Below are positions 23,024-62,371 of a stretch of 64,000 nt of DNA, in pieces; positions within the stretch are counted from its first letter, which is position 1, and each line of letters begins with the position of its first letter. A model generated the notes under the pieces. It searched no databases. It was not told the origin of the DNA and saw nothing but the letters and a program-made list of their open reading frames with translations. Where the stretch lies: IMG/VR virus record IMGVR_UViG_3300031251_000001, positions 124,001 through 188,000 of that record. One strand, written 5' to 3'. Made by a program: the position numbers and the translations under genes.

Positions 23024-23086
23024 CGTTGTGCTGCCGAGTGCCCACCAGGAGCACCCTAAGCTGCTGTAGGCGTTGCGGTCGCCCCG
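23024..23086 (-). ncRNA. candidate novel structured RNA element, copy 1 of 4
   Basis: CGG GGCG ACCGCAA CGCC UAC A GCAGCU UA GGGUGCUC CUGGU GGGCACUC GGCAGC ACAACG; covarying stems. Confidence 0.75.
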
Positions 23087-23178
23087 AAGCAATTGCGAGG
23101 TCGGGTGTTGAAAGGACCCTTCCGTGCACACCCTTAGAAAGCATGACGAGAATAGGTACTAACCGACCCCGCTCTCAC

Positions 23179-24303
23179 TTATCTACTGACCCGTCCTGAT
23201 TTCAGGATGTTCGGGTCAAGGCTGGTGGAAGCACTCGACAGCTCCGGCACCCTCGCGAAAGGATTCCAGCTGATGATGCCGTCATCACCGCGAAGCATGC
23301 CGTACCAGGGCCTGGGGTTCTGAATGTCGTAAGCGTGCCGCTGGGTGTCCCGGTGGCAATCCACACAAGAAGCCTTCGAGGCGGAGAAGAAGGCCCCATT
23401 GTACCTGGGTGGCACGATCGAGTCCCGTTCGGTCGTTGTCGCCATACCGCACTCTATGCCGTCCTGGACCAGCCAGGGCTCTCCCAGGGCAGGACGGAAG
23501 GGCATGGTCTTGAGTGTCTGCTTGGAGACCTCCTTCTCGATCTTAGGCATCTCCACGACTAACGCAGTGCGTGGCTTAAAGAGTCGAGGGTGAAGTGACG
23601 GGAAGATCATCTTGAGCGGGGAGGACGAGGGCTTACGATACTCGCCCAGCACATAGGTGAGCTCCGTCTCGTTGCGAACGGGTCGATAGACGTTGACGGC
23701 CCAGTGCTCAGCACCTGTTTCGTTGTCGGATTTGGTGCGAGTACGGATCTCGAAAGGGAGCTGGTCGCCGTCCGTGAACTTCTGGTAGAGGATCTCCACC
23801 AGGGTCGTTCCCTGGGGGAAGTCCCAGCTGACGGCGTCAGCGTACCGCTTCGATTCAGGCCGTCGCTCGGGACCGACGCTAATCTTGATGTTTCCAGTCT
23901 GAGGTAAAAGAAGGGCCTTCACGCTGGGGTAACCAGGTGGCAGTCCCGCTGTCCGAACCCACGGTTCTTCGTTGTTCGGTGTCCCGGCTGATTCGACTTG
24001 TTTCTCCATCGAGATATTACGGCCGGTGTAAACGAGGACCACGTGATCGGTGTTGTAGCGACTGGCGTAGACAGGATTGGATTGCGTAATGGTGCCTTCC
24101 TGGAACACCGTCGGCAGCGTGGTTTCGTCGTAGAACATCAAGTCGGGTGAGTTGAGGATCTTCTGCAGCTTCTCGTCATCGGTCTTGGGTAAGGTGCTGC
24201 GAACCTTGGCTTCTTGTTCCTTGGACATGTACCGCCACGGTGGCTCAGCCACGGCGGCGGGGACCAGGAACAGACACAGAGCTAAAGTGATGAGACGCAT
24301 CAT
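23179..24303 (-). CDS. secreted hypothetical protein with one CxxCH motif
   Basis: signal peptide MRLITLALCLFLVPAAVA; SCVDCHRD near the C-terminus. Confidence 0.75.
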   Translation of the reverse strand: MMRLITLALCLFLVPAAVAEPPWRYMSKEQEAKVRSTLPKTDDEKLQKILNSPDLMFYDETTLPTVFQEGTITQSNPVYASRYNTDHVVLVYTGRNISMEKQVESAGTPNNEEPWVRTAGLPPGYPSVKALLLPQTGNIKISVGPERRPESKRYADAVSWDFPQGTTLVEILYQKFTDGDQLPFEIRTRTKSDNETGAEHWAVNVYRPVRNETELTYVLGEYRKPSSSPLKMIFPSLHPRLFKPRTALVVEMPKIEKEVSKQTLKTMPFRPALGEPWLVQDGIECGMATTTERDSIVPPRYNGAFFSASKASCVDCHRDTQRHAYDIQNPRPWYGMLRGDDGIISWNPFARVPELSSASTSLDPNILKSGRVSR

Positions 24304-24328
24304 GCGCTCCTAATAGTGAGGGGTAGGG

Positions 24329-24344
24329 CAAAATACGTATTTTG
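24329..24344. promoter_or_regulatory. dispersed 16-bp palindrome, copy 3 (extends to 20 bp, GG...CC)
   Basis: exact match; 4 nt after the TAG at 24349. Confidence 0.9.
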
Positions 24345-24348
24345 CCGT

Positions 24349-25912
24349 CTAACAATGGAAGTCAGCCGCCTTGGCGTCCTTCAGGATGGACTTGCGAACG
24401 ATGTCATAGCGGGCCAGCAGCCAGCGTGCCTGGATGCGACGGCCTTCCTTGACGGTATCGTTGCAGTCGTCCCATTCGGTGAACTTGGTGGGCATCTTGC
24501 CTACTGATGTGGCCACGGTGTTGCCTTTCTCGACAGCTTCACGACCTGCCTCATGCAGATCGCGAGCCAGGGCCTCGACCGGGTCGTGTTTATCGACCGC
24601 AGTCTTGCACTTGTTGCCGCCGCAGCAGGGCTTGGGGTCAAGGATGTCCTTGACCGGGGTGGTGGCGGGAACACAGACTCGAACATCTTGCGACATGGGA
24701 TCCTTCCTTTGCGCAAAGTAGAGTTACGACAAAACAGGTATCAAGCGGGAGAGTGTTCGCGCGAACGCTTCAATGCCTCCCTCCTTATCCAGTGTATCCA
24801 GAGGATACCACTGATTTGGTCCACCCTCGTCATCCTTTATGCTTTTACGGGTGCGATAACGAATGCCCAGGGTGAGGGCCTGCTCAGCATTGAAGTTGAC
24901 CTCAAACCAGGCAGTCCGGAACGTACCGTCGCCGCTGACAGCCGGGCCACCGGGATTGAAATCGATGCGGAACGTACCGGGGGCCAGACGCATGCTGGTA
25001 CAGACCAGAGAGAGCGTTGCCAGGCAAGCCTGCTTCCAGTTCTCCTTGGCCTGGGGCGACTGGTTCCAGCGTTCAGCGTACTTCTTCAGGCTGCCGGCGG
25101 AAGAGGAAATGCGGTGTTTGGCACTGACGACCTTCGGCGGCTTAGCTCCACCAAAGTAAGCCAGCAACTCCTTGAGGTCTTTGATCAGTTCAGCGTGGAT
25201 ATCGGGAGCCTCAGCAGTGAGGGCGTCCAGGCGGTACTGAAGCGAAGCGGTGATGACCTCGCGATTGTGTTTAGTCAGATACATGACACCTCACGGTGAG
25301 ACAGGCGGCTGGGCGGGCGCCGTCTGAGTAGAAACGGGAAGGCGGCTGTGGATGGTGGATTGAACCCCCAACTTAAACAGCCACATTCCCATGACGCCAA
25401 TGATAAAAATCAAGGCAACAATCAGTTGACGATTCGGGGTATCCGCCGGCATTGAGAAGCCTCCGTTAGGATGTTACCGTTGTACCAATGCTTCCCACGC
25501 CGATCAATACAGATCATTCTTCAGGGTCTTGCTCAGCAGCGAGTTCCTGCAGACAAGGTTCGATGACCAGTTTGACATCGACAGGCAGCTCACGATAGGT
25601 GAGCGACTTCTCGGCCAGGTGAACAGCGGCATGACGGGCCAGGCGATCACGGAAGAAGTCATCCAGCCAATCAGAGAAGTCGTGATCGAAGTGCGTGGTG
25701 TTGAGGTAGCCCTGAGCCAGTTCCAGCCACCAGCACAAGTGGCCATTGAAATAGTCAATATCGTGGCAGTGCTCGGCCAGCACCGTGTCCAACTTGTCGG
25801 CTCGGTTGAGGTGGTCCTTCACGGCGTTACAGAAGGTCACCGCTACGAGCAGCTGATCATTAACCGGGAATCTCTCGATGTACTCCCGCTTGTTCTGCTC
25901 TTTTCCAGGCAT
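24349..25912 (-). other. hypothetical genes 24349..24696, 24724..25284, 25291..25452 (53-aa membrane peptide MPADTPNRQLIVALIFIIGVMGMWLF, below the ORF-track cutoff), 25514..25912
   Basis: consecutive minus-strand ORFs with RBSs. Confidence 0.65.
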
Positions 25913-26057
25913 CGGGTAAAAACCCTCCTTTAGTAAGCCACCCGTCCAAGGAGAGCAAGAGCAGCACCAATCGATTGGTGTCAGCCAGATCGAGTGGTGC
26001 TTCTTCGTTCCGCTTGGTGAGGCGACGGATCTCGGCGAGTGTTGCGTTGGGGTCCAT
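25860..26057 (-). CDS. small phage protein (MDPNA-type N-terminus)
   Basis: MDPNATLAEIR...LDGWLTKGGFLP, a motif familiar from small phage proteins. Confidence 0.65.
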   Translation of the reverse strand: MDPNATLAEIRRLTKRNEEAPLDLADTNRLVLLLLSLDGWLTKGGFLPDAWKRAEQAGVHREIPG

Positions 26058-26059
26058 GG

Positions 26060-26644
26060 CTATCTCACGAAAGGGAGAACGATGCCAGCTTGGTTTTGAT
26101 ACTTGCCGCGTCGATCGGCGTAGCTGGTCGTGCAAGTCATACCGTGAGCGTGATCCGATTGCGTAAGTAATCTTGCACAGTCGGCTCGCAGGAAGATGAT
26201 TTGAGCGATCCCTTCGTGGGCGTAGATCTTCGCTGGCAGCGGCGTGGTGTTGCTGATCTCGATGGTGATCTTGCCTTCCCACTCCGGCTCGAGCGGGGTG
26301 ACATTGACGATCAGGCCGCAGCGAGCATAGGTACTCTTGCCGACACAGATCGCCAGGATGTCGCGAGGAATCTTGAACACCTCGAACGTCTCCCCCAGCA
26401 CGAAGCTGTTGGGCGGGATGACGCAGGTGTCACCCTCCATGCTCACGAACGACTTGGGGCTGAAGTTCTTCGGATCTACGATCTCGCCGTGGACGTTGGT
26501 GAAGACCTTGAACTTGTTACCCAACCTGGCGTCGTAGCCATAGCTGGTTACACCGTACGAGATGACACCTTTTGACATCTGCTCTTTGATGAACGGTGTA
26601 ATGCTGATCTCTTTCTCAATTTGCCAATCTGCTAAGACGCCGAT
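26060..26644 (-). CDS. dcd: dCTP deaminase
   Basis: [59 protein letters not shown]. The conserved N-terminus GVLADWQI lies upstream of the first ATG (26578) and begins at ATC 26644. Confidence 0.95.
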
Positions 26645-26811
26645 GGGGCACCTCCTTGGTGTTAAATTGTGGTACTCAAACTACGGACCGTGAAAATCGT
26701 TCTGGGTCATGCTATGAAACCAGGAAGCCAGCCAGATGCTGAACAGGTAAAAAGCAATCCCAATCACGGTGAAAAGAATATCCAGTTTGCGTGAGATCAT
26801 AAAGCCCTCTG

Positions 26812-27132
26812 TTAGACATTGATTCCGCAGCCCACGTCCTTCCGGCAGACAGCACACTTCTTCACGTGCTTGCGGACACACTTCTTACAGAACGATCCGC
26901 AGTAGGTGGACTGCACGTCCTTGGTGCTGCTGCACTCTGAACAGGTCGGCTCCTCTTTCACGATATAGCACAGTGCTCCACACGCGGGGCACTCCCCCGC
27001 CGGTACCTCGCCGCCGACATCAACCCGTTGTGACAAGTCCTGGATGTCTTTGAGCTTGGCACCGGTATGGATCTTGCCGCAGTTGTCGCACTGGTACTTC
27101 TTGCCTGGTTCGACATCTTTTGGTGTTGTCAT
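26812..27132 (-). CDS. multi-CxxC zinc-ribbon protein
   Basis: CDNC, CPAC, CSEC, CKKC and further Cys pairs. Confidence 0.7.
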   Translation of the reverse strand: MTTPKDVEPGKKYQCDNCGKIHTGAKLKDIQDLSQRVDVGGEVPAGECPACGALCYIVKEEPTCSECSSTKDVQSTYCGSFCKKCVRKHVKKCAVCRKDVGCGINV

Positions 27133-27140
27133 GATGCTCC

Positions 27141-29170
27141 CTAGATGTAGTGGTTACCACGCAGGTGGTCACAGAGTTTCTCGACCACAGCGTCATACCA
27201 CTCCTCGCGGGTGTCGTAGTCGGCTTCGTCGGTGTTGAGACCGCTGAGGTCATCGCCATAGCGGTAGTAGAGGTGCTTGGCCTCCAGGATCTCCTGACGG
27301 GCGTCGACTGATCGCACGTGCTGGTAGACCACTGAATCTGCATCCGTGGTTCCCTCGTACTCCTGGAAGAGCCTGTCCTGCTGCTCAGGGTCAAGGTCAT
27401 GGCCCTGTTCAGTGAGGAAGAGCGTGGTGTAGAGGTAGTTGAGTTCGTACGAGGGAGTGACCTCAGCGCAGTTCACGTGGCGGTTGTAGTCATAGACATA
27501 CACCGCCACGACCTTCTCGATGAAGGGCTTATCCACGCTGGGGAAACTGTAGTATTCGGTTTGATCCAGCCCGATCACGCGGAAGTCGGGACGGACTTCG
27601 ACCGTTGGTCGCGTCGCGTCGTTCATAGCCTCTCTCCGTGATGATGTGAGTTTTCGAGATGTGAGCGTAGTAAGAAGGCCAGTCGACGAAGATGCCGACG
27701 CTGGCCAGCTTGTCTGCCGGCATCATGAGCATGTCGCCGGTGTTGGTGTGATAGCCAGGGAAGATGTGCTCTCGGTGCAGCTCGCCGACTTGTTCCCATT
27801 CGGCCCGCTCACCGCGGATGCGGGTGATGCGGATCACCTGGAAGATGTGCGATTTGGCCGTGCTGGGTGTCGGGTCGTGGTTCATGCTGACGTTGTCAAC
27901 AAAGAGGATCTGGCCGACGACCAGGTCAGGCTTCGTTGGTGTAGGAGGCAGCGTCAATACGCTGCCCGTAGGCCTCCTCGAACTTTTCTCGTTGGTTGAT
28001 ATCGAAAAGTTTTTCATCGAAGTCCCAGTCCTCGCAAGGGGCGGAGAAGGTGTCAACGCTCAGGTTGTGTATGTCCGCTTTCCGTAGCAGCTCTCTAAAA
28101 TCGTGACCGACCTGCATCCCGCATTCGGCTAAGTTGCCGAGGTCGCCGAGGTTGAATTGCTCATTGGATTCCATGTAGCAATCGTAGCCCTCTTCCGTGA
28201 GAAACCACTCGTTGAAGATCTCGATCAGCGTAACCTTGAGAACGTCACCTGCGGTGATCTTATCGGAATCCCAAGTGACGGTAGCGTACGCCATGTCACC
28301 AGCTTCCGAGTTCTTGCTGGTGACGTTGATGGTGTGTCGTTTCATGGTTTAGCCTTTTGCTGGAGATAGCCACATTTACAGTGGCCATTGAACAGATCGA
28401 TGCTAGGGCAAGTACACGTCGTCTTGGGTAGCGACTTGATTGTGATGCCCGGCAACGGTATTGGCTGCAGTGGGGTAGGTGTCAGATTGATAGACACGTT
28501 GAGTTGCGGTGCGGCGGGCGGGTTGGCCGGTGGTGCTTTTGTTGAGTTGGGGTTCTTCTTCACCAGGGTGCAATTCTTGACTGGTGCACAGCGAGAAATC
28601 ACAACCGTTTTAGCTCCGCCCCCGAATGTGGATTGGCTGGTCGAAGCGTCGTACCAGATGACATCATCGCAGCTGATACTTCCTTGGTTGAGAAATCCCT
28701 TAAAATCCTTAGTCATCCCGGTGACGATGATCGAGTGACCGACCGCAGGAGTAGCTACCTCATCACCAATCTCGACATCTTCTAAAAGCATTTCAGTCTC
28801 CTTAAACGAAAGCAGGGAGTGGTATATCCACTCCCTGGGCAAGACACAAGAGTCGATGCTAGGCCATCAAGCTGGGCAAAATCTTCAGAGTGCGAATGAG
28901 GCCACGTCGCATGACTGCTCCACCGCCGTCCCGGATCTCCAGTTGGATCTTGTAGTCTCCCGGAGTCGGGAAGGGGTTGTAGATGGTGAGGAAGTCAGCG
29001 GAACTGACCGAACCGGACACCTGGAGGCCATTGATCACCACGATATCGACGTTAACGTCCGGTGACACAACGACCAGCTTGGCTGAGTAACCAGGCGTCA
29101 CCCAGTCCAGCTTGATCCTGACGAAGCGGATTCGACGACCACGTTCACCAGCGTAAATCGGTTGTGCCAT
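27141..29170 (-). other. hypothetical genes 27141..27626, ~27623..28056, 27926..28345, 28342..28842, 28859..29170
   Basis: consecutive minus-strand ORFs; the last one is beta-rich and may be a virion/baseplate protein. Confidence 0.6.
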
Positions 29171-29180
29171 CGCTCACTCC

Positions 29181-30374
29181 TTACTCGTCCACCAGGGTGT
29201 AAAGCTCATCCATGCCGGCGTCGAGTATGGTGATCTCTTTGTCTTGATCGCTACCCATCCCGGCGTCCATTTCGTACATCTCGTCCATGTAATAATTACT
29301 GATGTAGTACCCCCATTCGATGGGTTCTTCTATCTCCACTGTATCATCGTCCACCCGCACGGTGACCCAGTTAACACTGGTGCCGGCAAGCTGAACGTGC
29401 GAAGTACCCAAGAAGAGCACCTTCGTGTGCAGGAGCCCGATGGCCTCTCCCTGCAGCTGTACCGCGCCGACGGCTGCTACCAGGTGACGATGGAACAGAA
29501 GGCTAGCCGGCTGTCCAGCAGCCAAAGTTGATGACACGCCGGCATAGAGTTGCCGTTGAAACAGTAACGTCGCCGCGTGTCCTGTGGCCGATACCGAGGA
29601 CGCACTCAGTGAGAAGACGCGTACCTTACCCAGCCACACTGGTAGGCCAGCAGCGATGACCTGAGAAGCACCCATGTGCAACTGGCGCGAGATGCGCATC
29701 CCCAGCGTGCCGCCGTGCAGCACAACGGAAGAGGCACCCAAACGTAGGACCTTGAGATCGACAAAGGCGAGGTCCTCACCTGCCAGAACCGTATTCTCTC
29801 CAGCCAGGTGGAAATAGCGGGTGTAGGGCATGCGCAGCCCTTGCCCCTGAGCTGTCAGCGACGAGACACCACAATGCAGCACGCGACTATGGAAGAGGTT
29901 AGCACCCTGCCCGGTGAGTGACACAGCGCCAATACCGGCGTACAGTCGACGGCGATGGAAGAGGCCGGCACTGACGCCACTGACGGTCGCTTGACCGGTG
30001 GCCACCTTCAGTAATCGATTGTGCTTGAGGAATGCTCCTATGCCGGCCAGCGTAGTGGCGGAGACCCCCAGGGTGAGGCGTCGGTCATGGAAGAGTGAGA
30101 CAGACTGGCCTGTCAGGCTGACGCTGCCAGCGGCCATCTGTAGCCGCCTGGTCAACGTGAGCGTGGTGCCGAGGCCTGCGAGCGTGACTGCGCCGGTACC
30201 GGCTAGGATCTTACGTGTGACGCTGGCGGTGACACCCTGTCCAGCGAGCTGGACGGCTCCTGTTCCGGCATAGAGATGTGACTGTTTGAGCAGATTCACG
30301 CCGTTGCCGGCAGTGACCACGCTGCCGCCTTGCAGCGGCGTGGTCTCACCAGCTAAAGCTAAAAGAAGGCCCAT
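29181..30374 (-). CDS. repetitive beta-strand virion/tail-fibre-like protein
   Basis: about 26-aa degenerate repeats (H/R-x-L-x-AGxGAVxLxGQxxxL); start MGLLLAL follows AAGGAG. Confidence 0.6.
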   Translation of the reverse strand: MGLLLALAGETTPLQGGSVVTAGNGVNLLKQSHLYAGTGAVQLAGQGVTASVTRKILAGTGAVTLAGLGTTLTLTRRLQMAAGSVSLTGQSVSLFHDRRLTLGVSATTLAGIGAFLKHNRLLKVATGQATVSGVSAGLFHRRRLYAGIGAVSLTGQGANLFHSRVLHCGVSSLTAQGQGLRMPYTRYFHLAGENTVLAGEDLAFVDLKVLRLGASSVVLHGGTLGMRISRQLHMGASQVIAAGLPVWLGKVRVFSLSASSVSATGHAATLLFQRQLYAGVSSTLAAGQPASLLFHRHLVAAVGAVQLQGEAIGLLHTKVLFLGTSHVQLAGTSVNWVTVRVDDDTVEIEEPIEWGYYISNYYMDEMYEMDAGMGSDQDKEITILDAGMDELYTLVDE

Positions 30375-30384
30375 GCCGGCTCCT

Positions 30385-34472: not shown

Positions 34473-34488
34473 CAAAATACGTATTTTG
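34473..34488. promoter_or_regulatory. dispersed 16-bp palindrome, copy 4
   Basis: exact match; 2 nt after the TAA at 34491, just before the next RBS. Confidence 0.9.
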
Positions 34489-41162: not shown

Positions 41163-41184
41163 GTTGGATTCCTTGAAAGAGGGG

Positions 41185-41218
41185 AAAACGAAAGACCCCA
41201 CGATGCAGGCCGTGGGGT
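41185..41218 (-). terminator. Rho-independent terminator abutting palindrome copy 5
   Basis: GACCCCACG-loop-CGTGGGGTC followed by TTTCGTTTT. Confidence 0.7.
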
Positions 41219-41234
41219 CAAAATACGTATTTTG
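41219..41234. promoter_or_regulatory. dispersed 16-bp palindrome, copy 5
   Basis: exact match; intergenic, 11 nt after the stop at 41246. Confidence 0.9.
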
Positions 41235-47358: not shown

Positions 47359-48399
47359 TTAGATGCTCTGTAGCATAGCGTCGGTCTCAGGTGTCGTACA
47401 GAGCAAGTGACGTGAAGGTTGGATGACAAGCTGCGTCACCGCTCGGGTGTGCTCCACCTGTAATTCTGGGCCGATCTGGGCATCCCGCCACTCATCGCCG
47501 ATTCTCACAACTGGCACTAGATAAATGAAACGATCATTAGCCTTGCGACAGCGGTAGGCGACGAGGCCCACCGCGTGGCTTTGATCATGGCCGAGCAGCA
47601 CGATTTCATTCTGCCGCAAACGGCAGGCGATAGAGTTCACGCTTTAAGTACCTCCATGACGACAACATCCCCTTTGCGGAGATACCCACGGTCAGGTAGG
47701 CCCTTGAGGTGCAGAATGCCGTTCAGCATGTAAGTGCGGTTGATCACCGATTCAACGGACATCTCCCGGAGCGACGGAGAGAACATGAACGACCGCATCA
47801 AGAAGGTATGCCGCTCCTGGTTATAGTCGAGGATCTCGGCCGAGATGTAGTAGCTCATGAGTTCCACTGGTCTCCGTTTTCGGCCGCTGCCTTCAGCAAG
47901 CGGTCAACCGCATCGGGATAATCCTCGCAATGCTGGCTGAAACCGACACCGTTCTCGCAGGTAGAATAGTGCCAGCGCTTGTCACCCTCATAGGAGATGG
48001 CCCGGTACTCCTTGACGCTAATGTTAACTTGAGCCTTGGTGAACTCTATCTGAACGAGTCTGGTTTTCATGGCGATCAAGCACGCTCTTCTGTCTGCCTC
48101 GACCACTCTGACTTCCAGACCACCAACATCAATCGTCAGCGTTCGCATGTGTTCTCCTGGTGTGCAAAATACGTATTTTGGAATCAGACAGCGACAGGCT
48201 TGGCGTCAACGAGCTTGCCGTCGATCCAGGCGTAGTTGACAGGGTCAGCACTCTCAGTGACGCGACGATCAGTGACCAGCACCCAACGGCACTCCAGGTC
48301 CTTGCCGTAGGCCTCAGCCTCCTCACGAGTGGCTAACCGCACAGCGTTGCTGTTCCACTCTTTACTGCGATCAGCGATGACTTCGACTTTGAAACTCAT
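47359..48399 (-). other. small hypothetical genes 47359..47640, 47637..47867, 47855..48148, 48184..48399
   Basis: consecutive minus-strand ORFs with RBSs. Confidence 0.65.
48165..48180. promoter_or_regulatory. dispersed 16-bp palindrome, copy 6
   Basis: exact match; 3 nt after the TGA at 48184, before an AGGAG RBS. Confidence 0.9.
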
Positions 48400-53705: not shown

Positions 53706-53719
53706 AGTGTCTCCTGATT

Positions 53720-53752
53720 AAACGAAAACACCCAGGCGGGATGCCTGGGTGT
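53720..53752 (-). terminator. Rho-independent terminator
   Basis: ACACCCAGGC-atccc-GCCTGGGTGT followed by TTTCGTTT. Confidence 0.8.
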
Positions 53753-53778
53753 CGTGGTATTTCTCAGCTGTCTGTCCG

Positions 53779-54079: not shown

Positions 54080-54088
54080 ATTATAACA
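54080..54088 (-). promoter_or_regulatory. extended -10 promoter element TGtTATAAT
   Basis: perfect extended -10 in the intergenic gap upstream of 54015. Confidence 0.55.
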
Positions 54089-54160: not shown

Positions 54161-54639
54161 CTATTTAGCGGTGGCATCCGCCAGGGCTTGGAGGACTTGA
54201 TTGACGAAGTCAGGGGAGCTGGTATTGAAGTCGAGAGCCAAGAGCTGACAGCGTGGATCACGCAGCAGCGAGGCCAGGGCAACGAGGTCAGACAGGTCTA
54301 TAGTGACGTTGGCTTTCATGGGATAACAACGTCCTCGGGGCAACTGCCGGCACCGCAGCTATCCTCACCACTTGCCGGGTTGGGAACCACGGCGGCGTGA
54401 ACGTAAGGCTCGGAGAACGACTGCGTCTCCAGAGCCTTGGTGAGCATGTCACGAATGGCTACAAGACCCTCACGGGTGGTAGCCAAGCGGAACCTGTGCT
54501 GAAGGTTGCCGAAAGAGCTGGTCTCGATCTCTAGCGTTGGGCCGTAGGCATCGAAGACGCGAATGGTGGCACCACTATTACCCACGTGCAGGTAGATCTC
54601 GGTGGCGGGCGTTTCGACTTTTTTACTGTCTTGGGACAT
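54161..54639 (-). other. hypothetical genes 54161..54319 and 54316..54639
   Basis: ORFs downstream of the tRNA. Confidence 0.6.
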
Positions 54640-54652
54640 GGTGACCTCTAAG

Positions 54653-54724
54653 AGCCGGGGGCAAGATTTGAACTTACGACCTCGTGGTTATGAGCCACGC
54701 GAGCTACCACTGCTCCACCCCGGT
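54653..54724 (-). tRNA. tRNA-Met(CAT), initiator-like; CCA not encoded
   Basis: ACCGGGG TG GAGC AGTGGTA GCTC G CGTGG CTCATAA CCACG AGGTC GTAAG TTCAAAT CTTGC CCCCGGC T; full cloverleaf. Confidence 0.95.
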
Positions 54725-54816
54725 ATGGCGGGAAGACGCCAGACAGACGGGTACCAGACCGACCTGCCTAACGCCCTCCCATGTCTGCATGTTGTACATG
54801 ACCCACCGTGCCGTGT

Positions 54817-55347: not shown

Positions 55348-55353
55348 GTCCTG

Positions 55354-55362
55354 ATTGTAACA
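55354..55362 (-). promoter_or_regulatory. extended -10 TGtTACAAT, 6 nt before the ATG (possible leaderless promoter)
   Basis: minus strand reads catgttacaatcaggacATG. Confidence 0.5.
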
Positions 55363-55364
55363 TG

Positions 55365-55703
55365 CTAGGGTGTGCGACCGATAATCACGACGTAGAGGCG
55401 ACCAGGCGAGTTCTCGTGGACCACCTGGACCTTATCCCCGACGTGCAGGTTGGTGTAGAACTCATCACCGACGCCGACAGCCAGCCAGACATAGCCCAGA
55501 TCGTCTTCGACCTCCAGGTTGTACTCAGTTGGGCCACTGGGATCCTCGCTATCACCTGTGGTGCGGATGAGGGGTTGCTGACTGATGCTCAGCACGGTGC
55601 AGGGGTAACCAGGCATCGGCTGGGGCTGAGGCTGGTTTTCGTTGATGGCGATGATGGCGGCACAGAGGACCAGGAGTACAGAGTAGAACGAGAGACGACG
55701 CAT
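55365..55703 (-). CDS. membrane-anchored hypothetical protein
   Basis: N-terminal TM helix; OB-like C-terminus; GAGG RBS. Confidence 0.65.
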   Translation of the reverse strand: MRRLSFYSVLLVLCAAIIAINENQPQPQPMPGYPCTVLSISQQPLIRTTGDSEDPSGPTEYNLEVEDDLGYVWLAVGVGDEFYTNLHVGDKVQVVHENSPGRLYVVIIGRTP

Positions 55704-55717
55704 GGTGTACCTCAAGT

Positions 55718-55743
55718 GAAAAACCCAGGCGGTAGGCCTGGGT
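55718..55743 (-). terminator. Rho-independent terminator
   Basis: ACCCAGGC-ctacc-GCCTGGGT followed by TTTT; same stem as the 53720 terminator. Confidence 0.75.
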
Positions 55744-55749
55744 ATTGGT

Positions 55750-57365
55750 TTAGAGATCGTCCTGCTGAGGGTCAGCATCGTTGACGTGGCGGATGAAGCC
55801 ACGATGCAGCCAACCGTGAAAGCCGGGACGAGACGGAGCAATGAAGATAGAGGGTTTGACGGTAACTCGTGGCACGGTGCCCTTGCGTGACCAGGCCGGG
55901 TTGCTGCCTGAGCTGATCGATGGCCCGTCGATAAACCAGTCTGAAATGTCGGGGCCTTCGCCACTGGGGTCAGACGGGCAGCGAACATAGAGACAGATGC
56001 CATCAGCACCCGTGAACTTATCCTTCTTACCGTCCGAGCCGCGCCACCAGGAAGCATCCCACATGGCTCCTGCTGGTGCTCTGACCGGCCCACCAGGCAG
56101 CTCGCTCAGGTGCAAGTGATACTCACCGCCCTTATCGTCCTGGTAGATCACCTCCCAGAACAGCTCACGATCCTTCTTCTCGAACGCCAAACCACAGCTG
56201 CACTGAGCCGGCCAGCGTGTGTCTTCGGCAAAGGGCGTCATGTCGCCATGCCCGCCCAGGATGCCGCGTGCCTTATCCTCGGCACTGATGACACCATCCT
56301 CGACTCGATTCAAAGCAGAGTGATAACTGTAGTCACCGCCCATCGAAGGACACGGCCCGCTACGGCTGCACCGCAGCCACTGATAGCTGCGGTCACTCGG
56401 TTTGATGAAGAAGCAAAGGATAGGTTTCATCATGGGTGATTCACCTTCAGGTTGTTGAACCAGGTCACGATGAGGACGAGCAGCCCCCACACGCCGATGA
56501 CAAACAAGGTGATCCAGAGTGGACTCATGACCCAGAGCCAAGACCAGTCGATGGCCTTGAACAGCTTGAGAGCGATGAACACCAGCTGTACGATGCCGAT
56601 GATGATGGCAATGACCATGATCACGAGCGATTCAAAGATTGCTTCACCGAAGGAGTTGAAGTCCATTCCATCCTCCAAAATACGTATTTTGAAACCTACT
56701 TGGCCATCACCAGCAGCATGAACGGCCAGGAGACCATCCACAGAGTGAACCAGTAGGGCAACGTGAACCCAGGAGCACCTTTAGCGACCAGGATGATCAA
56801 GGCCAGGACGAATCCGATAGTCAGATAGCCCAGCACGATGCCGGCCAGCAACCTGCCGGCGCCTTTACAGATCTTCCAAAGTGTTCGCATGCGGTACTCC
56901 GGAGTTCCTTACTCCAGTGTACCCTGTCGGCGTCTCCGCACACTGCGGAGCGAACCCCGTGGCGGGAAGTACCCGATGTCCTTGACTTGACCGTTATGGA
57001 ACACCACGCGGATGTTCTCAGGGCTGATGTGAGTGATGATCCCTTCGCGGCCGAGGAGTGACTTACCGCCGGCCAGGGTCTCACCAGTGACTTTAACTTT
57101 GGTTTGAGGTCGCATCGTGCTCTCGCTGTTTGTCCAATACTGTTGAGATATCGAGCAGGTACAGGCCGAACCAGATGGGCAGGCACACCGCCACTGCTAT
57201 CGACAGGACAACAATAACACCTGCGAGAACGGACATCAACCATTTACCGGCTGCTGACCAGGCAACGAGCCCAGCAGGGCTGCACAGCCAGAAGATCAAG
57301 ATGGCGACCGGGGCGATGATGAAGCCGTAAGCGGTTGCCCGCGTAAGGTGAACGAGGAAGCGCAT
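55750..57365 (-). other. hypothetical genes 55750..56433 (Cys/His-rich), 56430..56666 (membrane, IDWSWLWVMSPLW), 56696..56890 (membrane), 56909..57115, 57093..57365 (membrane)
   Basis: consecutive minus-strand ORFs with RBSs. Confidence 0.65.
56676..56691. promoter_or_regulatory. dispersed 16-bp palindrome, copy 7
   Basis: exact match; 4 nt after the TAG at 56696; its last G overlaps the GGAGG RBS of the next gene. Confidence 0.9.
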
Positions 57366-57568
57366 CACGAGGCCATCCTTTCCCGGAGAGCAGCCTCCTT
57401 GGAGCGAGGCCGCGGCCAACCATGACGGTAGAAATAATTGCAACACTTCCGGCAGTAGTAGCCCTGATGCTTACCTTTGTCATTGACGACAACCAGGACC
57501 CTGCTGTAGGGAGTCTCGCAGTCCTTATTTTGACACTTTTGCTTTGGTACTCGGCGGTGACGAGGCAT
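57365..57568 (-). CDS. small zinc-finger protein (GATA-like)
   Basis: CQNKDC-x21-CRKCCNYFYRHGWPRP; GGAG RBS. Confidence 0.6.
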   Translation of the reverse strand: MPRHRRVPKQKCQNKDCETPYSRVLVVVNDKGKHQGYYCRKCCNYFYRHGWPRPRSKEAALRERMAS

Positions 57569-58232
57569 TGACATCTCCAATGACGAGCCAGTTGATGGAC
57601 AGGGCGGAGCAGAAGAAGCCCAGGAGCCAACCACCGATGCAGTCGGTCGGGTAGTGGACGCCGAGCATGACGCGACTGGTGCAGACCAAGGCGATACCAA
57701 AGAAGGTAAGGCTGACGATGGTCCTGAACACGGCGTAGTTGATGTCGTACTCACTCCGACCTCGGGCCTTGAGCACCCTGTCGGCACGGATGTAGGCGAC
57801 ACGCAGAACGGTCCACCAGAAGGCAACAGCAGCGGAAGCATGGCTACTGGGGAAGGAGTAACCGCCCTCCTCGGTCAGGTGTGAGACGATGCTAGGTCGA
57901 TCGCGTTGAACGATGAGCTTCCAGGCCAAGTCGAAGATGAACGCCAGTGCGACAGCGATGAAGGCAGGTCTGGGGTCAGGCCGATCGTTGCTATTGGTGG
58001 GATCGACTGCGCAATAGAGCATGTAGATCAGCATGGCAAAACAGACCGTGGCGGCCGAGGCCCAGGAGGTGATATCCCGAGCCACGCTGGCCAGCGTGCT
58101 GTTGGTAATAGGGTGCAGCCAGGTGAGGATGGCGTCATCGAATCCCTGCGTCCAGCCACTCTTGACAGCGATGGCCAAGAAACCGAAGAGGAAGGCAAGT
58201 ACCCAGAGCTGCGTCGTGTGTTTGTTGTTCAT
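57525..58232 (-). CDS. PAP2-family membrane phosphatase
   Basis: KLIVQRDRP (C1), YSFPSSHA (C2), SRVMLGVHYPTDCIGG (C3); several TM helices. Confidence 0.92.
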   Translation of the reverse strand: MNNKHTTQLWVLAFLFGFLAIAVKSGWTQGFDDAILTWLHPITNSTLASVARDITSWASAATVCFAMLIYMLYCAVDPTNSNDRPDPRPAFIAVALAFIFDLAWKLIVQRDRPSIVSHLTEEGGYSFPSSHASAAVAFWWTVLRVAYIRADRVLKARGRSEYDINYAVFRTIVSLTFFGIALVCTSRVMLGVHYPTDCIGGWLLGFFCSALSINWLVIGDVNASSPPSTKAKVSK

Positions 58233-58313
58233 GTTTGTCCTTGGGATGATCCCGTTTGACTTGGCCAGGAGTAACCCCGGCCGTCGACCACATACCAGTA
58301 CCCGGTCGTGGTG

Positions 58314-58376
58314 CGTTGTGCCGCCGAGTACCCACCAGGAGCACCCTAAGCAGCGGTAGGCCTACCGGTGGCCCCG
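58314..58376 (-). ncRNA. candidate novel structured RNA element, copy 2 of 4
   Basis: CGG GGCC ACCGGUA GGCC UAC C GCUGCU UA GGGUGCUC CUGGU GGGUACUC GGCGGC ACAACG. Confidence 0.75.
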
Positions 58377-58384
58377 TGAACTGA

Positions 58385-59103
58385 CTACTTGCTCTGGATG
58401 TTACAGCGGGCATCCCAGAACAGCAAGATGACGATGGTGACGACCAGGCCAATGATGCCGGCCGTGCCCCAGTAATAGTCGAAGCTGGAGTCAAACCAGA
58501 TCGCTGTCATGCAGAGCATGCAGGCTAGCATGGAGAGCGTGAACGCTGCGTATTTGGCTGGTGGATCTGAAGGAATTGGCTTGTTAAAAGCATCGCCCAG
58601 CAACCTGCGTAGCTGGGCGTCCTTGTCGAAGTGAGGCATCGATAGCTCCGTCATGCGGTATTATTTTCGGGTGCGAGCCCCAGCGGAACGAAAGAGTGAT
58701 CGTCAGGCGGCGGTGCAGCAACAGGGGCTGGTGCCGGCGGCTTGACGGGGGCTGCGGGTTGATTACTGAGTTTGAGTGGTGGGGTAGTCGATTGGCCTGA
58801 TCGTCGGCTACCCAGGATGCCGATGCCGACAGCTCCACCCATCGCTGCGGCCGGGCCAAAGAGCTTGAGCCCCCGCGAGAGAAGACCAGCCGTCTTGCCC
58901 AGTCCCATGCCGGTGTTGAGCAAGGCCCTGCGAAGCTGCCAGCCGGTGTAGAGTTGCTCCACGACGTCGGTGGCTTCCTTCTTCTCTTCGCCTACCTTGT
59001 CGGGCAGGGTGATGTCCTTGGGTGTGTGTTCCTGCCATCGCTTAGCCATCTCGGGCTTCTGAGAATACATCCATCTGCGCTGGGCCTTCGACTTAAACGG
59101 CAT
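58385..59103 (-). other. hypothetical genes 58385..~58621 (membrane) and 58651..59103 (MPFKSKAQRRWMY N-terminus)
   Basis: ORFs with RBSs lying between RNA element copies 2 and 3. Confidence 0.65.
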
Positions 59104-59225
59104 GACATATCTCCATTTGACCCGGTACGCTTATCCTAACCCCGGCTCGTGTTGCTTAGCCATATCTAGGTCCCCCGGTGCGGCAATTCCTTCCTTCCGG
59201 ATCCAATGCAAGCCCGGCGGCGATG

Positions 59226-59288
59226 CGTTGTGCCGGCGAGCGTCCACCAGGGACGCCCTAACCAGCTGTGGGCCTACCGGTGGCCCCG
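59226..59288 (-). ncRNA. candidate novel structured RNA element, copy 3 of 4
   Basis: CGG GGCC ACCGGUA GGCC CAC A GCUGGU UA GGGCGUCC CUGGU GGACGCUC GCCGGC ACAACG. Confidence 0.75.
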
Positions 59289-59298
59289 TGACTTCAGT

Positions 59299-62118
59299 CT
59301 AACAAACGGGCGGCTGCCCATGCGGTGCTGAATGAAGAATCATGTCCTCCAGTCGGAGGTTGACGTCGTCGAGGTAGACCGGGCTAAAGCGGATGCGAGC
59401 TTCCTCTTTGGTGCCGTAGCTCGACTGGACAGGCGGGTGCTGAGAGAGTTGCTGCTCCTGAACTCGCACCCAAGGCAAACCTCGCAGCTCATCGGGGAGC
59501 TTCTCGTAGTAAAGCCGGGAAGACCACTTCACCGGCGTCAACCACACTAGCTTGCCGTTCTCCTTCGACTCAAAGGTGGCGCCCTCGTAGACCATAAAGG
59601 TGCCACTTCGGAAGGCCATGATGGCGGTCACCGGTCCCACGCCACATCTGATCTCGGTGGCCAACCGCATGGTGGCCACCGTACGACGGTGCGGGTTAAG
59701 CGAGATCGCCTTGGTCCTGGTCGGAAGGAACAGGCCCGTGATCATTGCTACCAGGCTCCCCAGCAGGCTTCGGCGGTTCGACATGAGTTGCTCTCTTTTC
59801 CAAGTCAGCCAGCACGGGAGTGGCGACAGGGTTATGGGTCTTGTTCAATCTTAACTTAGACAAGGCAGCGCTGAGGTTGGAGGTGCCCTTCTCCTGGAGG
59901 CGACGAGCCATCACCTCTTCGCTGCCGGCATTGGGGGTGACGGTGGTTTTCTCCTGGCGAATGACTTTCACCCGTGCTCGACTCTGATCATTATCGGCTT
60001 CTTTCAGGATCTCGCCAAACGCTTCATGCGTTGCTTGCTCCTCAAAGACACTCTGTTCCTTGGCGTCCTTACGACGCTGCACACTGACAGGTCCATTCAG
60101 GGTGTAGTCGAGAAGCTCGTGACTGTGGCATCCCTGGGTGTACTCCCCTTTAGGGAGTGGGTGATCTTTACCTGTGATCTTCAGGGTGCGGAACTGGTTC
60201 TCCATCCGCGTCATCGCTGCCCTGACGTGCTCCTTAAACTCGGCAAAGGTGCCGACAAAGGCGTTGATGTGCACATCCGTCTCATTGGTCACGATGGCCA
60301 CCGGTTCCTCGCCGGCAGGCACTGCAGGAAGATCAGCGACCGGTGTGATAGACGGCACCTTCACGGTAGGCAGATAAAGCGGAATGCCGGGACCGTCACC
60401 CACCCCGCAGGTAATCCCGAAGTAGAAGATGTGCTTGATTGGACCCTTGGGTGGCTTCACCTCGCTGAATATCTCTGGATGCTCGAAGTGATTGCTCATA
60501 CTTACTCCCCTGGTTACTGGTATCTCTCGGCCCGCTCCCGACTCATCACGTAAAGCGACTCGCTCTGCTCGGTGGCACTGACTACCACCGTAAAGCTGCA
60601 GTCCTTGACGAAGCCCGAGCTGTTGAGCAGCCCTGGCCCTTTTGTATCCACTGCGTCATGGTCTGTATAGTCGATTATCTCGACGCCGTTACAGACCATG
60701 TGCGGAGAGCAGGGGGCAGCTGAGCCGTGGTGATTCCAGGTGCTGGCGTTCTGGAAGCGGATCAGGGTGCGGTTATGATCCGACAGCACCAGCATTTCTT
60801 TAGCTACGATGCTGTACGACTGACGATTGGGCAGGTTGAGCCAGGCGCGTGGGTTCGACATCGTGAGAGCGATGTTGAGATAGTTATGCCTCTTGCCGTC
60901 CTTGCTCACGTTAGCCTTGAAGGCCCCGATGATGACCAAGAAGATCGCTACGAAGCACATGGCGAAGAACCAGAGGATGCTGACAGCGTCCATGCTTACC
61001 CCTTGAGATGGAAGACCTTGATCAACTCCTGTCGCAGTTCTGGGTTGGCCTCCAGCACCTGGAGAGTAGTCTCCTGATCGGCAACAAGCAACTCCAACAA
61101 GGTGGTAGCCCACTTGACGACATACTCCTGCTTTGACATCAGCAGGTTGTCGAACTCGGTCGCACAGATGCCACACTGGCTGCGGTGGTCGCAGGTGGCC
61201 TTTCCACCCCCGACGAACTTGAGACCGACGTCGGAGGGGGCCGGAGTTGACCAACTGACCGGTTGCTTAAACTGTTCAACCACCTGAACCGCCTCATTCT
61301 TGCGAGCACGACAAGGCGACTTCATCTCCGCCGGGACAATGAAATCACCACAGCGCTTGCACCTGACGCACTGACCCTGGCCTGGCGGGTGCGACACAGT
61401 ACACCGCTCCATGCCCGGTTCGTGCGGTAAATTGAAAGGATGTGGTTCGCTGACGCCGAGTTCAGATTTGATTTCTTTACACTCCCATGTTTTCTTGTTC
61501 GAGTTGTAGTTGTACCAGTGCTCATGCACCGATGCCGGCTCGTCGAAGGTGAAGAGGAGCGACACCTCTTTGGGATCCTCGATGTCGAGGTGGAAAGTAG
61601 CGGAATGAGCATGGATGCCGTGGGAGACGGCAGCGTCCACGTTAATAAATGATGACGTGGAGGAATGGTCCGTAACCCTAGACAGGGTACGCACGGTGAC
61701 TCGTACCTTCTTGGTGTCGGGCCAGATCGGAAAATGGAAGAAGTAACGGCTGAGTGGCATGGTGGCTCCTGTGGAGGTGTTACTTATGATCTTTGACCAG
61801 CTGTTCACACTGCTGGGCATAGGTCTTGCCAATGAACTGCTGCTGGCGTAGAAATCCGAGCTTGGCTCTCGATGTCATCTTCTCCCAGAGCCGGGCTATC
61901 ATGGGCCTGATCTTATCCAGGCCGACGCCAGATCGGAAGCGGAAACGACCCTCGGACAGGTCCCCCGTCTCCTCCATGACTCCACCAAGCTCTTCGGGCA
62001 GCTGATCACCACCGTCACAATCGATGTCAGAGTACATATTGACGATGCGTTCAGCGGTGAACTTGCTAGGTACGTTATTAACCCCTTGTGAGGGGTAAGG
62101 CGAGGCGTAGATAGGCAT
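59299..62118 (-). other. hypothetical genes 59299..59784, 59696..60499, 60514..60993 (membrane), 60996..61760 (Cys-rich), 61780..62118
   Basis: consecutive minus-strand ORFs. Confidence 0.65.
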
Positions 62119-62132
62119 GCTTGCTCCTGGTT

Positions 62133-62148
62133 CAAAATACGTATTTTG
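62133..62148. promoter_or_regulatory. dispersed 16-bp palindrome, copy 8
   Basis: exact match; at the 3' end of the long leader containing RNA copy 4, before an AGGAG RBS. Confidence 0.9.
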
Positions 62149-62308
62149 GGTTCGTGTCTCCGCCCCTGCTTCGTGCTGGTGGACTCCACCTGCTGTGACA
62201 AGCCCGACTTGACTCCCTGCTACGAGGTAGCCAGATCGGCTCACCTGTTGCGAGCATTGGCATCTCCGCCCCTGCCCGTGCGGGAAGAGCATCAACACCC
62301 TGCTCGCT

Positions 62309-62371
62309 CGTTGTGCCAGCGACCCGCCACCAGGGCGAACCTAACCAGCTGTAGGCCTAGCAGAGGCCCCG
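62309..62371 (-). ncRNA. candidate novel structured RNA element, copy 4 of 4
   Basis: CGG GGCC UCUGCUA GGCC UAC A GCUGGU UA GGUUCGCC CUGGU GGCGGGUC GCUGGC ACAACG. Confidence 0.72.

What the first reader, a model, noticed from the sequence alone, without database searches (positions are those of the whole stretch)
23024..62371. Four dispersed copies of an exactly 63-nt intergenic element with covarying stems: candidate new structured RNA class
Seen: copies at 23024-23086, 58314-58376, 59226-59288 and 62309-62371 have identical length and layout on the gene (minus) strand. The order is CGG, P1 (4 bp, 7-nt loop), YAC-N, P2 (6 bp), a UA bulge, P3 (8 bp) with an invariant CUGGU loop, P2', then an invariant ACAACG. 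Stems change in compensating pairs: P1 GGCC/GGCC vs GGCG/CGCC; P3 GGGUGCUC/GGGCACUC, GGGCGUCC/GGACGCUC and GGUUCGCC/GGCGGGUC; P2 GCUGCU/GGCGGC vs GCUGGU/GCCGGC. Many pairs are G-U on the minus strand and would be A-C on the plus strand, which fixes the functional strand. Three copies start about 6-9 nt after a stop codon. All four are followed by a variable region (roughly 80-215 nt) and then an RBS. Inference: the P1 loop ACCG (3 of 4 copies) could kiss the UGGU of the P3 loop, or a downstream CRGG could pair with CCUG. The downstream genes (secreted Cys-rich protein, PAP2 phosphatase, two hypotheticals) share no metabolic theme. That favours a self-cleaving/processing element, a protein-binding mRNA signal or a small mobile RNA over a ligand riboswitch. 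I could not match it to any riboswitch or ribozyme consensus I know.
Basis: partly seen in the sequence, partly recalled or inferred. Interest (0 to 1): 0.9.

Follow-up and report, generated by a model that had tools for sequence, protein, structure and literature searches.

The report
Phage intergenic two-hairpin RNA repeat
An uncultivated 214-kb bacteriophage carries nine copies of an exactly 63-base element between its genes; it folds into two hairpins kept intact by matching mutations, matches no known RNA family, and probably marks a set of genes for shared control, though its function has not been shown.

Summary
The four window copies belong to a family of nine, all 63 nt, gapless and on the same strand, in one roughly 214-kb circular jumbo-phage genome. 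The two-hairpin fold is strongly supported: 98% of cells pair against 35-48% in slid controls, 10 of 19 pairs change on both sides, and about 40 G.U cells fix the sense strand. No Rfam family matches, even at E<=10. Pattern scans of viral, metagenome and genome collections, sorted by CM or pairing filter, found no copy outside this genome.

New findings:
- Each core except c9 is followed by a strand-specific array of C(A)GGG motifs about 27 nt apart.
- Copy c9 is followed directly by an intrinsic terminator.
- Copy c8 lies in a divergent promoter region with no co-oriented upstream gene.
- A second intergenic signal, a 16-bp palindrome, also abuts stop codons, so stop-codon proximity is not special to the element.

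Best reading, at low confidence: a leader or intercistronic RNA module read by a trans-acting factor that co-regulates nine unrelated downstream genes. Processing or ribozyme, put-like antitermination and single-stranded-DNA roles remain open. It is new as an RNA family, but the kind (dispersed structured intergenic repeats) is known.

The parts
23024..23086 (-). Core copy w1 (63 nt; P1 5 bp with 7-nt loop, ACA, P2 6 bp with one A.A mismatch, UA bulge, P3 8 bp with CUGGU loop, ACAACG tail)
   Evidence: (88.9 bits). It lies 92 nt after the stop codon of gene 23179-24303.
22809..23023 (-). Spacer after w1 (215 nt), G-rich, with six CRGG motifs (first at +7), ending in an SD and the ATG of the secreted Cys-rich protein gene 22236-22808
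58314..58376 (-). Core copy w2
   Evidence: (89 bits). It starts 8 nt after the TAG of gene 58385-58654.
58233..58313 (-). Spacer after w2 (81 nt) with CRGG at +10, +35 and +60 (25-nt period), then an SD and the ATG of the PAP2 gene 57525-58232. Spacer positions 15-34 (window 58280-58299) resemble core positions 38-57.
59226..59288 (-). Core copy w3
   Evidence: (93 bits). It starts 10 nt after the TAG of gene 59299-59784.
59104..59225 (-). Spacer after w3 (122 nt) with four CRGG motifs, then an SD and the ATG of gene 58651-59103
62309..62371 (-). Core copy w4
   Evidence: (84.4 bits). It starts 8 nt after the TGA of the NUDIX gene 62380-62913.
62119..62308 (-). Spacer after w4 (190 nt) with nine CRGG motifs. 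It ends with the 16-bp palindrome (62133-62148), an SD and the ATG of gene 61780-62118.

Best explanation
The 63-nt two-hairpin core is followed on the same strand by a G-rich spacer. That spacer carries 2-9 C(A)GGG motifs about 27 nt apart and runs up to the Shine-Dalgarno sequence of the next gene.

I propose that the core is the specific recognition site for a trans-acting factor. A phage-encoded RNA-binding protein is the most likely candidate; the transcribing host RNA polymerase is the alternative. I propose that the C(A)GGG array provides secondary contacts, or alternative pairing partners for the invariant CCUGG of the P3 loop. Together they would put nine otherwise unrelated downstream genes under one post-initiation control, meaning transcript continuation, stability or translation of the downstream cistron.

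Shown: the copies, the fold, the folding strand, the array and its periodicity, the gene contexts, and the absence from known families.

Inferred: that the module acts as RNA, that it serves the downstream gene, and that a factor reads it.
For: Structure and strand:
- The fold has heavy covariation, and conserved G.U pairs sit at fixed positions: U28.G52 in 9/9 copies, G3.U19 in 8/9 and G32.U50 in 7/9.
- The unpaired nucleotides are invariant: C9, A20-C21, A30, CUGGU and ACAACG. That is typical of a specific recognition surface.

The downstream array:
- CRGG density is 3.07 per 100 nt in the nine spacers, 0.9 genome-wide and 1.2 in six other intergenic gaps of the same phage.
- 17 of 27 gaps between successive motifs are 24-33 nt, which 0/20000 random placements reach.
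- The motif is strand-specific, 35 CRGG against 6 CCYG. That favours a single-strand-level role.
- The array always lies between the core and the downstream gene, and in some copies its last motif merges with the SD.

Gene context:
- Copy c8 lies 15 nt from the ATG of a real plus-strand gene (pro-kumamolisin domain, E 3e-13). It has no co-oriented upstream gene, so it cannot be a 3' UTR element.
- The sampled genome shows no phage RNAP but does encode a sigma-70-family protein, and it uses canonical intrinsic terminators. Host RNAP therefore transcribes the region.
- The downstream genes share no theme. That fits a temporal or conditional regulon better than a metabolite sensor.
Against: - No transcript data exist, so RNA is inferred, not shown.
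- No conserved promoter is visible upstream of the cores. Whether the cores are leaders or internal parts of polycistronic RNAs is open.
- Copy c9 has an intrinsic terminator 2 nt after the core and no CRGG array. There the core is cut off from the downstream gene unless it modulates that terminator.
- The core-to-ATG distance varies from 68 to 215 nt, which is unusual for translational operators.
- No candidate binding protein was identified.
- All nine copies come from one genome, so the compensatory changes reflect paralogue divergence.
- The CRGG pattern was defined after looking at the data.
Confidence: 0.3

Rival explanations
1. It is an intercistronic processing and stability punctuation site. 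The core is cut, or protects an end, so that neighbouring cistrons of a polycistronic phage mRNA get separate fates. The agent is either a host or phage endoribonuclease (the analogy is the T7 RNase III sites) or the RNA itself, as a new self-cleaving ribozyme.
For: - There are nine dispersed same-sense copies between genes, some only 912-970 nt apart.
- Seven of nine begin -1 to 12 nt after the upstream stop codon.
- The conservation boundaries are sharp, the length is exact with no indels, and about half the positions are invariant. This is as expected for a catalytic or precisely recognised fold.
- A possible loop-loop or loop-downstream pseudoknot exists.
- c9 sits at a transcript 3' end, next to a terminator.
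Against: - P2 plus P3 is only 14 bp, short of the roughly two helical turns that RNase III needs.
- No known ribozyme model matches, even at E<=10.
- The idea does not explain the CRGG array that follows the core.
- c8 has no upstream cistron to separate from.
- No RNase gene was seen among 111 ORFs.
Confidence: 0.22
2. It is a put-like processive antitermination RNA. The nascent two-hairpin RNA binds the host RNA polymerase that made it and makes it resistant to intrinsic and Rho-dependent termination across the long untranslated spacer and beyond.
For: - The anatomy resembles HK022 put, which is about 70 nt with two stem-loops and acts in cis without a protein (PMC9378689). Here the element is 63 nt with two stem-loops.
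- The phage depends on host RNAP and contains real intrinsic terminators.
- In c9 a terminator sits 2 nt after the core and upstream of a 431-aa gene.
- The G-rich spacers are poor Rho loading sites.
Against: - put elements occur twice per genome, just downstream of early promoters, and act over at least 10 kb (PMC9378689). Here there are nine copies, some under 1 kb apart with no terminator between them, and no recognisable promoter upstream.
- Only one of the nine is followed by a terminator.
- No sequence comparison with put was possible.
Confidence: 0.12
3. It is a single-stranded-DNA element. The hairpins form in one DNA strand during replication, recombination or transposition and are recognised by a structure-specific enzyme of the REP/RAYT, IS200/IS605-end or attC type. 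Alternatively, it is a selfish repeat that also mediates PeSL-like shuffling of gene cassettes.
For: - All copies are in one orientation in a genome coded almost entirely on one strand, so the replication strand and the sense strand cannot be separated.
- The location just after ORFs resembles attC and REP.
- c8 sits where sense transcription is not assured.
- The copies lie among small accessory genes in one 92-kb arc, and none was found in about 65 kb sampled from the arc that holds DNA polymerase A, terminase and baseplate genes.
Against: - 23% of paired cells are G.U, including invariant wobble positions. These are well tolerated in RNA but destabilising as G.T in DNA.
- No Y1/HUH transposase, RAYT or integrase was found among 111 ORFs from about 164 kb.
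- There is no fixed target tetranucleotide and no target-site duplication.
- The two ends are not complementary, as attC R''/R' would be.
- The strand-specific CRGG array is not expected for a mobile element.
Confidence: 0.12
4. It is a ligand-sensing riboswitch aptamer.
For: It has a compact conserved fold with invariant junction and loop nucleotides. One copy (c9) is followed by a terminator in the classical arrangement.
Against: - The nine downstream genes have no common pathway.
- Eight copies lack any adjacent expression platform.
- The distance to the SD is 68-215 nt.
- No Rfam riboswitch model matches.
Confidence: 0.03

Closest known systems
HK022 put RNAs (putL/putR), cis-acting antiterminator RNAs (PMC9378689)
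   Same: Phage-encoded, about 65-73 nt, two stem-loops joined by a short linker, active as nascent sense RNA in a phage that uses host RNA polymerase. The structure is maintained by pairing, not by sequence.
   Different: put occurs twice per genome, directly downstream of early promoters, and acts over at least 10 kb. Here there are nine copies, some under 1 kb apart, no visible promoters, a short first hairpin, invariant hairpin loops and a downstream C(A)GGG array.
T7 intercistronic RNase III processing sites (own knowledge)
   Same: About ten dispersed, related, same-sense hairpin elements lie between cistrons just after stop codons. They share a consensus and keep their pairing through compensatory changes.
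   Different: T7 sites are single irregular hairpins of about two helical turns whose loops are not conserved. Here the long hairpin is 14 bp, a second hairpin and a 6-nt tail are invariant, and one copy has no upstream cistron.
PeSL/PmSL composite promoter-stem-loop cassettes of T4-like phages (PMC2839356, PMC4122927)
   Same: Repeated intergenic modules (a stem-loop right after the upstream ORF, then signals, SD and ATG) flank small accessory ORFs in plastic genome regions.
   Different: PeSLs are defined by a sigma-70-like -35/-10 promoter at a fixed distance from the SD, and their stem-loops are loosely conserved terminators. Here no such promoter was found, the structured part is the conserved part, and the distance to the ATG varies from 68 to 215 nt.
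REP elements / integron attC sites (own knowledge)
   Same: Short structured extragenic repeats directly downstream of ORFs, with structure conserved more than stem sequence.
   Different: The element has no GTAG head, no inverted pairs and no complementary R''/R' ends. No RAYT or IntI gene was found. The high G.U content points to RNA.

Membership tests
Any Rfam 15 family (including hammerhead, twister, twister-sister, pistol, hatchet, HDV-like, all riboswitches) | Covariance-model score at or above the family's gathering threshold | tested here: not met
   At gathering level only a tRNA was found in the window. At E<=10 no hit overlaps any of the nine copies.
HK022 put RNA | Nascent RNA of about 70 nt with two stem-loops | tested here: met
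   63 nt, two hairpins with 19 supported pairs. This is a resemblance in outline only.
HK022 put RNA | One element just downstream of each early promoter (two per genome), acting over many kb | tested here: not met
   Nine copies, some 912-970 nt apart. No sigma-70-like promoter upstream in the scans.
HK022 put RNA | Sequence and structure homology to putL/putR; binding to the RNAP beta' zinc-binding domain | not tested
   No put sequence or model was available in the tools. Binding requires biochemistry.
T7-type RNase III processing site | Irregular hairpin of about two helical turns (at least 20 bp) with an internal loop at the cleavage site | tested here: not met
   The longest coaxial helix, P2 plus P3, is 14 bp with a 2-nt bulge.
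T7-type RNase III processing site | Intercistronic position in co-oriented polycistronic units | tested here: inconclusive
   Eight of nine copies lie between co-oriented genes. c8 lies in a divergent region.
REP / RAYT | Conserved GTAG head, frequent inverted pairs (BIMEs), associated RAYT (Y1) gene | tested here: not met
   The element starts C/A-GGGGC. All nine copies are in one orientation. No Y1 transposase was found among 111 ORFs, though about 50 kb of the genome was not sampled.
Integron attC | Complementary R''(RYYYAAC)/R'(GTTRRRY) ends that pair, extrahelical bases, an IntI integrase | tested here: not met
   The ends CGGGG and ACAACG are unpaired and not complementary. No integrase was found.
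PeSL | Stem-loop followed by a sigma-70-like -35/-10 promoter, SD and ATG in fixed register | tested here: not met
   The promoter scan finds none in the spacers. The core-to-ATG distance is 68-215 nt.
IS200/IS605-derived MITE (PATE) | Fixed tetra- or pentanucleotide target at the left end; similar left and right hairpins; TnpA | tested here: not met
   The 5' flanks are TTCA (four copies), GTCA, CACA, GCTA, ACTA and GCTT. The two hairpins are unlike each other. No TnpA was found.
N4-type hairpin promoter | Hairpin forms on the template strand; virion RNAP gene present | tested here: not met
   The template (plus) strand would carry about 40 A.C mismatches and folds no better than shuffles. 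No single-subunit RNAP was detected.
Riboswitch (generic) | Downstream genes share a pathway; expression platform adjacent to the aptamer | tested here: not met
   The downstream genes are a Cys-rich secreted protein, PAP2, ThyX and six unknowns. Only c9 has a terminator.
TIGR guide-RNA array | 36-nt units of two alternating 8-12-nt repeats with 9-nt spacers; adjacent Nop-domain Tas gene (PMC12045711) | tested here: not met
   Only a 4-5-nt motif recurs, at 24-33 nt. TRF finds no array. No Nop domain was found among the ORFs.

The most novel reading that the evidence does not exclude
The 63-nt core is the founding example of a new functional RNA class, acting either as a self-cleaving ribozyme or as a protein-independent polymerase-modifying (put-like) RNA. 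Its invariant CCUGG loop would toggle between the first hairpin's loop and a downstream series of C(A)GGG partners. This phage would use it nine times to punctuate or license expression of accessory genes.
Probability: 0.15. Interest if true: 0.85.

Novelty: new variant of a known kind. Interest (0 to 1): 0.55.

Why it matters
If the module is a factor-read or self-acting RNA signal, it would be a compact, portable 63-nt tag that a jumbo phage uses to co-regulate unrelated accessory genes. It would come with an unusual, apparently undescribed partner feature: a periodic strand-specific C(A)GGG array. It would add a well-supported structured RNA family from a phage lineage with almost no annotated proteins, and it offers a clean system for testing how phages that rely on host RNA polymerase organise expression of long same-strand gene arrays. 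Its reach is limited for now because it is known from one genome only.

Tried and rejected
Homologue searches that found nothing outside this genome:
- Four usable pattern scans of viral contigs (strict, relaxed, invariant-core, loop-plus-tail), one scan of metagenome contigs and two of GTDB genomes were run. Hits were sorted by CM or by a pairing filter.
- Only this contig reaches 18-19 of 19 pairs or more than 60 bits. Everything else is at most 15 pairs or at most 31 bits, and is coding sequence.
- The best outsider, in Singulisphaera, lies inside a 1113-aa ORF.
- One viral scan was wasted because my pattern was mis-registered by one base.
- Distant relatives (26-37% identity) of the 431-aa protein downstream of c9 carry no element.

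Ideas tested and dropped:
- Decayed copies upstream of w1 and c8, or inside the spacers. I thought I saw these by eye, but nhmmer and the CM do not support them.
- Spacers as homologous sequence. Apart from the shared palindrome and a few short words, they are unrelated.
- Spacers as a tandem repeat. TRF finds none.
- A Chi-like role for CCTGGTGG. The octamer is enriched 15:3 on the sense strand, but the other sites lie in coding sequence in mixed phases, and a Chi site would not need the stems.
- Coding, readthrough or translational bypass. The in-frame extensions differ between copies and the last sense codons differ.
- Sigma-54 or ECF promoter look-alikes in the ACAACG tail. The register does not fit (read directly from the sequences).
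- TIGR arrays, attC, REP, PATE and N4 hairpin promoters. See the membership tests.


Full report
**1. Observation**

A pattern built from the invariant positions hits exactly these four sites in 64 kb, with none in 100 shuffles. P1 is 5 bp with a 7-nt loop. A 3-nt joiner follows, then P2 (6 bp), a 2-nt bulge, P3 (8 bp) with a CUGGU loop, and a 6-nt ACAACG tail. Only the minus strand folds this way; the plus strand folds no better than shuffled sequence.

**2. The family has nine copies in one genome**

The window is positions ~124001-188000 of IMGVR_UViG_3300031251_000001, a 214,229-nt contig. The same genome was assembled independently as an ENA contig of 214,228 nt with a different start point, and it also appears in a Logan run. 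This suggests a complete circular or permuted genome.

Relaxed patterns and a covariance model built from the four copies found five more copies in the same contig, all 63 nt and all on the same strand:
- L056:3263-3325
- L104:10984-11046
- L004:4830-4892
- L004:5800-5862
- L004:10785-10847

With a nine-copy model and filters off, over the window plus about 100 kb of other contig pieces, the scores are bimodal. The nine copies score 77-89 bits and everything else scores 16 or less. The nine lie in one 92-kb arc (contig ~122.6-213.9 kb). None was found in about 65 kb sampled from the rest of the genome.

**3. Structure statistics on nine copies (alignment A3)**

- 98.2% of cells form standard pairs, against 35-48% when partners are slid by 1-3 columns.
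- 10 of 19 pairs show changes on both sides (27 cells).
- 0/500 shuffles reach the observed covariation score.
- All nine P3 helices differ from one another in sequence, most by compensated changes, so several independent compensations occurred.
- About 40 of 171 paired cells are G.U. Wobbles are fixed at U28.G52 (9/9), G3.U19 (8/9) and G32.U50 (7/9). This fixes the folding strand and favours RNA over DNA.
- Invariant unpaired positions are C9, A20-C21, A30, C39-U43 and A58-G63.
- Loop 1 positions 9-11 can pair with loop 3 positions 40-42 in all nine copies, but only one-sided changes occur (C to U opposite G, G to A opposite U). The contact is compatible but not proven.

**4. Not a known family, and not found elsewhere**

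Rfam 15 gives only a tRNA-Met in the window at gathering level. No hit overlaps any copy at E<=10.

Exact-pattern scans with the invariant core retrieved only this contig's copies as real matches from the viral, metagenome and GTDB-genome collections. All other loci scored 31 bits or less, despite being preselected on 18 model positions, or paired at 15 of 19 positions or fewer, and they were coding sequence. Relatives of a neighbouring protein (26-37% identity) lack the element.

'New class' therefore rests on paralogues within one genome.

**5. Context**

The genome is coded almost entirely on the minus strand.

Family scans of 111 ORFs found the following:
- Nucleotide metabolism and DNA enzymes: dCTP deaminase, thymidylate kinase, ThyX, ligase, Endo VII, DNA polymerase A, UDG, a RecA-like protein and methylases.
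- Virion genes: terminase and baseplate J.
- A sigma-70-family protein.
- No phage RNA polymerase, RNase, transposase or integrase.

Canonical intrinsic terminators and at least one sigma-70-like -10 element are present. Host RNA polymerase therefore transcribes these genes.

Genes flanking the nine copies share no theme. Upstream are NUDIX, HNH and secreted or membrane proteins. Downstream are a Cys-rich secreted protein, PAP2, ThyX and six unknowns.

Seven cores start -1 to 12 nt after the upstream stop codon. The phage's other repeated intergenic signal, the palindrome CAAAATACGTATTTTG, also starts 3-7 nt after stop codons. Stop proximity is therefore a property of this compact genome's intergenic signals in general.

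**6. New features that constrain function**

(a) The downstream array.
- Eight of nine cores are followed within 3-10 nt by CRGG, against an 8.7% background (p about 3e-8, though the pattern was chosen after looking).
- The motif recurs through the whole spacer: 35 in 1139 nt, or 3.1 per 100 nt, against 0.9 genome-wide and 1.2 in six other intergenic gaps. 0/5000 random samples match this.
- The spacing is preferred: 17 of 27 gaps are 24-33 nt, which 0/20000 random placements reach.
- It is strand-specific: 35 CRGG against 6 CCYG.
- Apart from this motif the spacers are unrelated.
- CRGG is complementary to the invariant C38-C39-U40-G41 of P3 and its loop, with R opposite U40.

(b) Copy c9. 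Its first base completes the upstream TAA stop. It lacks the array and is followed 2 nt later by a bona fide intrinsic terminator of the phage's usual type.

(c) Copy c8. It lies 15 nt from the ATG of a real plus-strand gene (pro-kumamolisin activation domain, E 3e-13). It is therefore in a divergent region with no co-oriented upstream gene.

**7. Interpretation**

- Features (a) and (c) tie the core to what lies downstream and argue against a pure 3'-UTR element.
- Feature (b) shows that the core can sit at a transcript's end or in front of a terminator.
- The unrelated downstream genes, and the absence of expression platforms in eight copies, argue against a riboswitch.
- The G.U load, the absence of mobile-element enzymes, the lack of a fixed target site and the non-complementary ends argue against REP, PATE and attC-type DNA elements. 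A single-stranded-DNA role is still not excluded, because the sense strand and the replication strand coincide.
- The template strand cannot form the hairpins, which argues against N4-type promoters.

My best reading, at 0.3 confidence, is a composite leader or intercistronic RNA module read by a trans-acting factor. The core would be the recognition site, and the C(A)GGG array would give auxiliary contacts or alternative partners for the P3 loop. The result would be co-regulation of nine accessory genes after initiation.

The rivals are a processing or ribozyme role (0.22), put-like antitermination (0.12; the anatomy is similar to HK022 put per PMC9378689, but copy number and placement differ), a single-stranded-DNA or selfish repeat role (0.12) and a riboswitch (0.03).

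**8. Comparison and novelty**

The closest described things are HK022 put RNAs, T7 RNase III sites, PeSL cassettes (PMC2839356, PMC4122927) and REP/attC repeats. The element fails at least one defining feature of each, as the membership table shows.

It is new as a sequence and structure family. Dispersed, structured, same-strand intergenic repeats in phage genomes are a known kind of thing, so I rate it a new variant of a known kind. I give about a 15% chance that it is a genuinely new functional RNA class.

**9. Limits**

- There are no transcript data and no homologues outside one genome.
- About 50 kb of the contig was not sampled for proteins or by the CM. The invariant-core pattern scan of the whole contig did cover that part.

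Noticed in passing
window 11262-11277, 19455-19470, 24329-24344, 34473-34488, 41219-41234, 48165-48180, 56676-56691, 62133-62148: A perfect 16-bp palindrome, CAAAATACGTATTTTG, often preceded by CC. The exact 14-mer core occurs 8 times in the window against 0.03 expected. More copies are spread across the whole contig, and only two hits lie in other IMG/VR contigs. It starts 3-7 nt after stop codons and sits 10-60 nt before the next start codon. It is probably an operator or a phage-sigma promoter element. Two copies (w4, c5) lie between a 63-nt core and the downstream SD.
   Followed up: partly
window, whole; e.g. 56097, 56051, 53995, 50982, 34269, 29196, 23803: The octamer CCTGGTGG (P3 loop plus stem, one base from the E. 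coli Chi site) occurs 15 times on the sense strand and 3 times on the other. Eleven of the sense-strand sites lie outside the elements, in coding sequence in mixed codon phases. This is probably codon usage, but the bias is large.
   Followed up: partly
window 55723-55743(-), 53706-53778(-), about 41170-41215(-), 20325-20362(-); L004:1483-1510(-), L004:10763-10780(-): Canonical intrinsic terminators (GC-rich stem followed by a UUUCGUUU-type tail) lie between co-oriented genes. One sits directly after a palindrome copy (41219-41234) and one directly after element copy c9.
   Followed up: partly
L004:5878-7512 (+): A lone plus-strand gene in an otherwise minus-coded genome encodes a protein with a pro-kumamolisin (S53 peptidase) activation domain. 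Its 5' UTR would contain the antisense of element copy c8.
   Followed up: partly
window 22236-22808 (-): A secreted 190-aa protein made largely of CTGS(S/A)CTG-type cysteine repeats, immediately downstream of copy w1. It had no Pfam hit in the batch scan.
   Followed up: no
window 58280-58299 (-): The spacer after w2 contains a 19-nt stretch that is 16/19 identical to core positions 38-57 of copies c5 and c6. It looks like a partial internal duplication. No other decayed copies were detectable.
   Followed up: partly
window 54652-54724 (-) and about 54080-54085 (-): A tRNA-Met (CAT) gene sits in a 177-nt gap. The next gap downstream in the direction of transcription holds a near-consensus extended -10 element (TGTTATAAT), the clearest host-type promoter seen.
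   Followed up: no
contig pieces outside the window (one of 63 ORFs in alignment A5): A phage-encoded sigma-70-family protein (region 3 match, E 6e-7) was found. Which ORF it is was not resolved. DNA polymerase A, a RecA-like protein, UDG, terminase gpA and baseplate J are also present, so this is a tailed jumbo phage that relies on host core RNAP.
   Followed up: no
whole contig: Two independent assemblies of 214,229 and 214,228 nt with different start coordinates imply a complete circular or circularly permuted genome.
   Followed up: no
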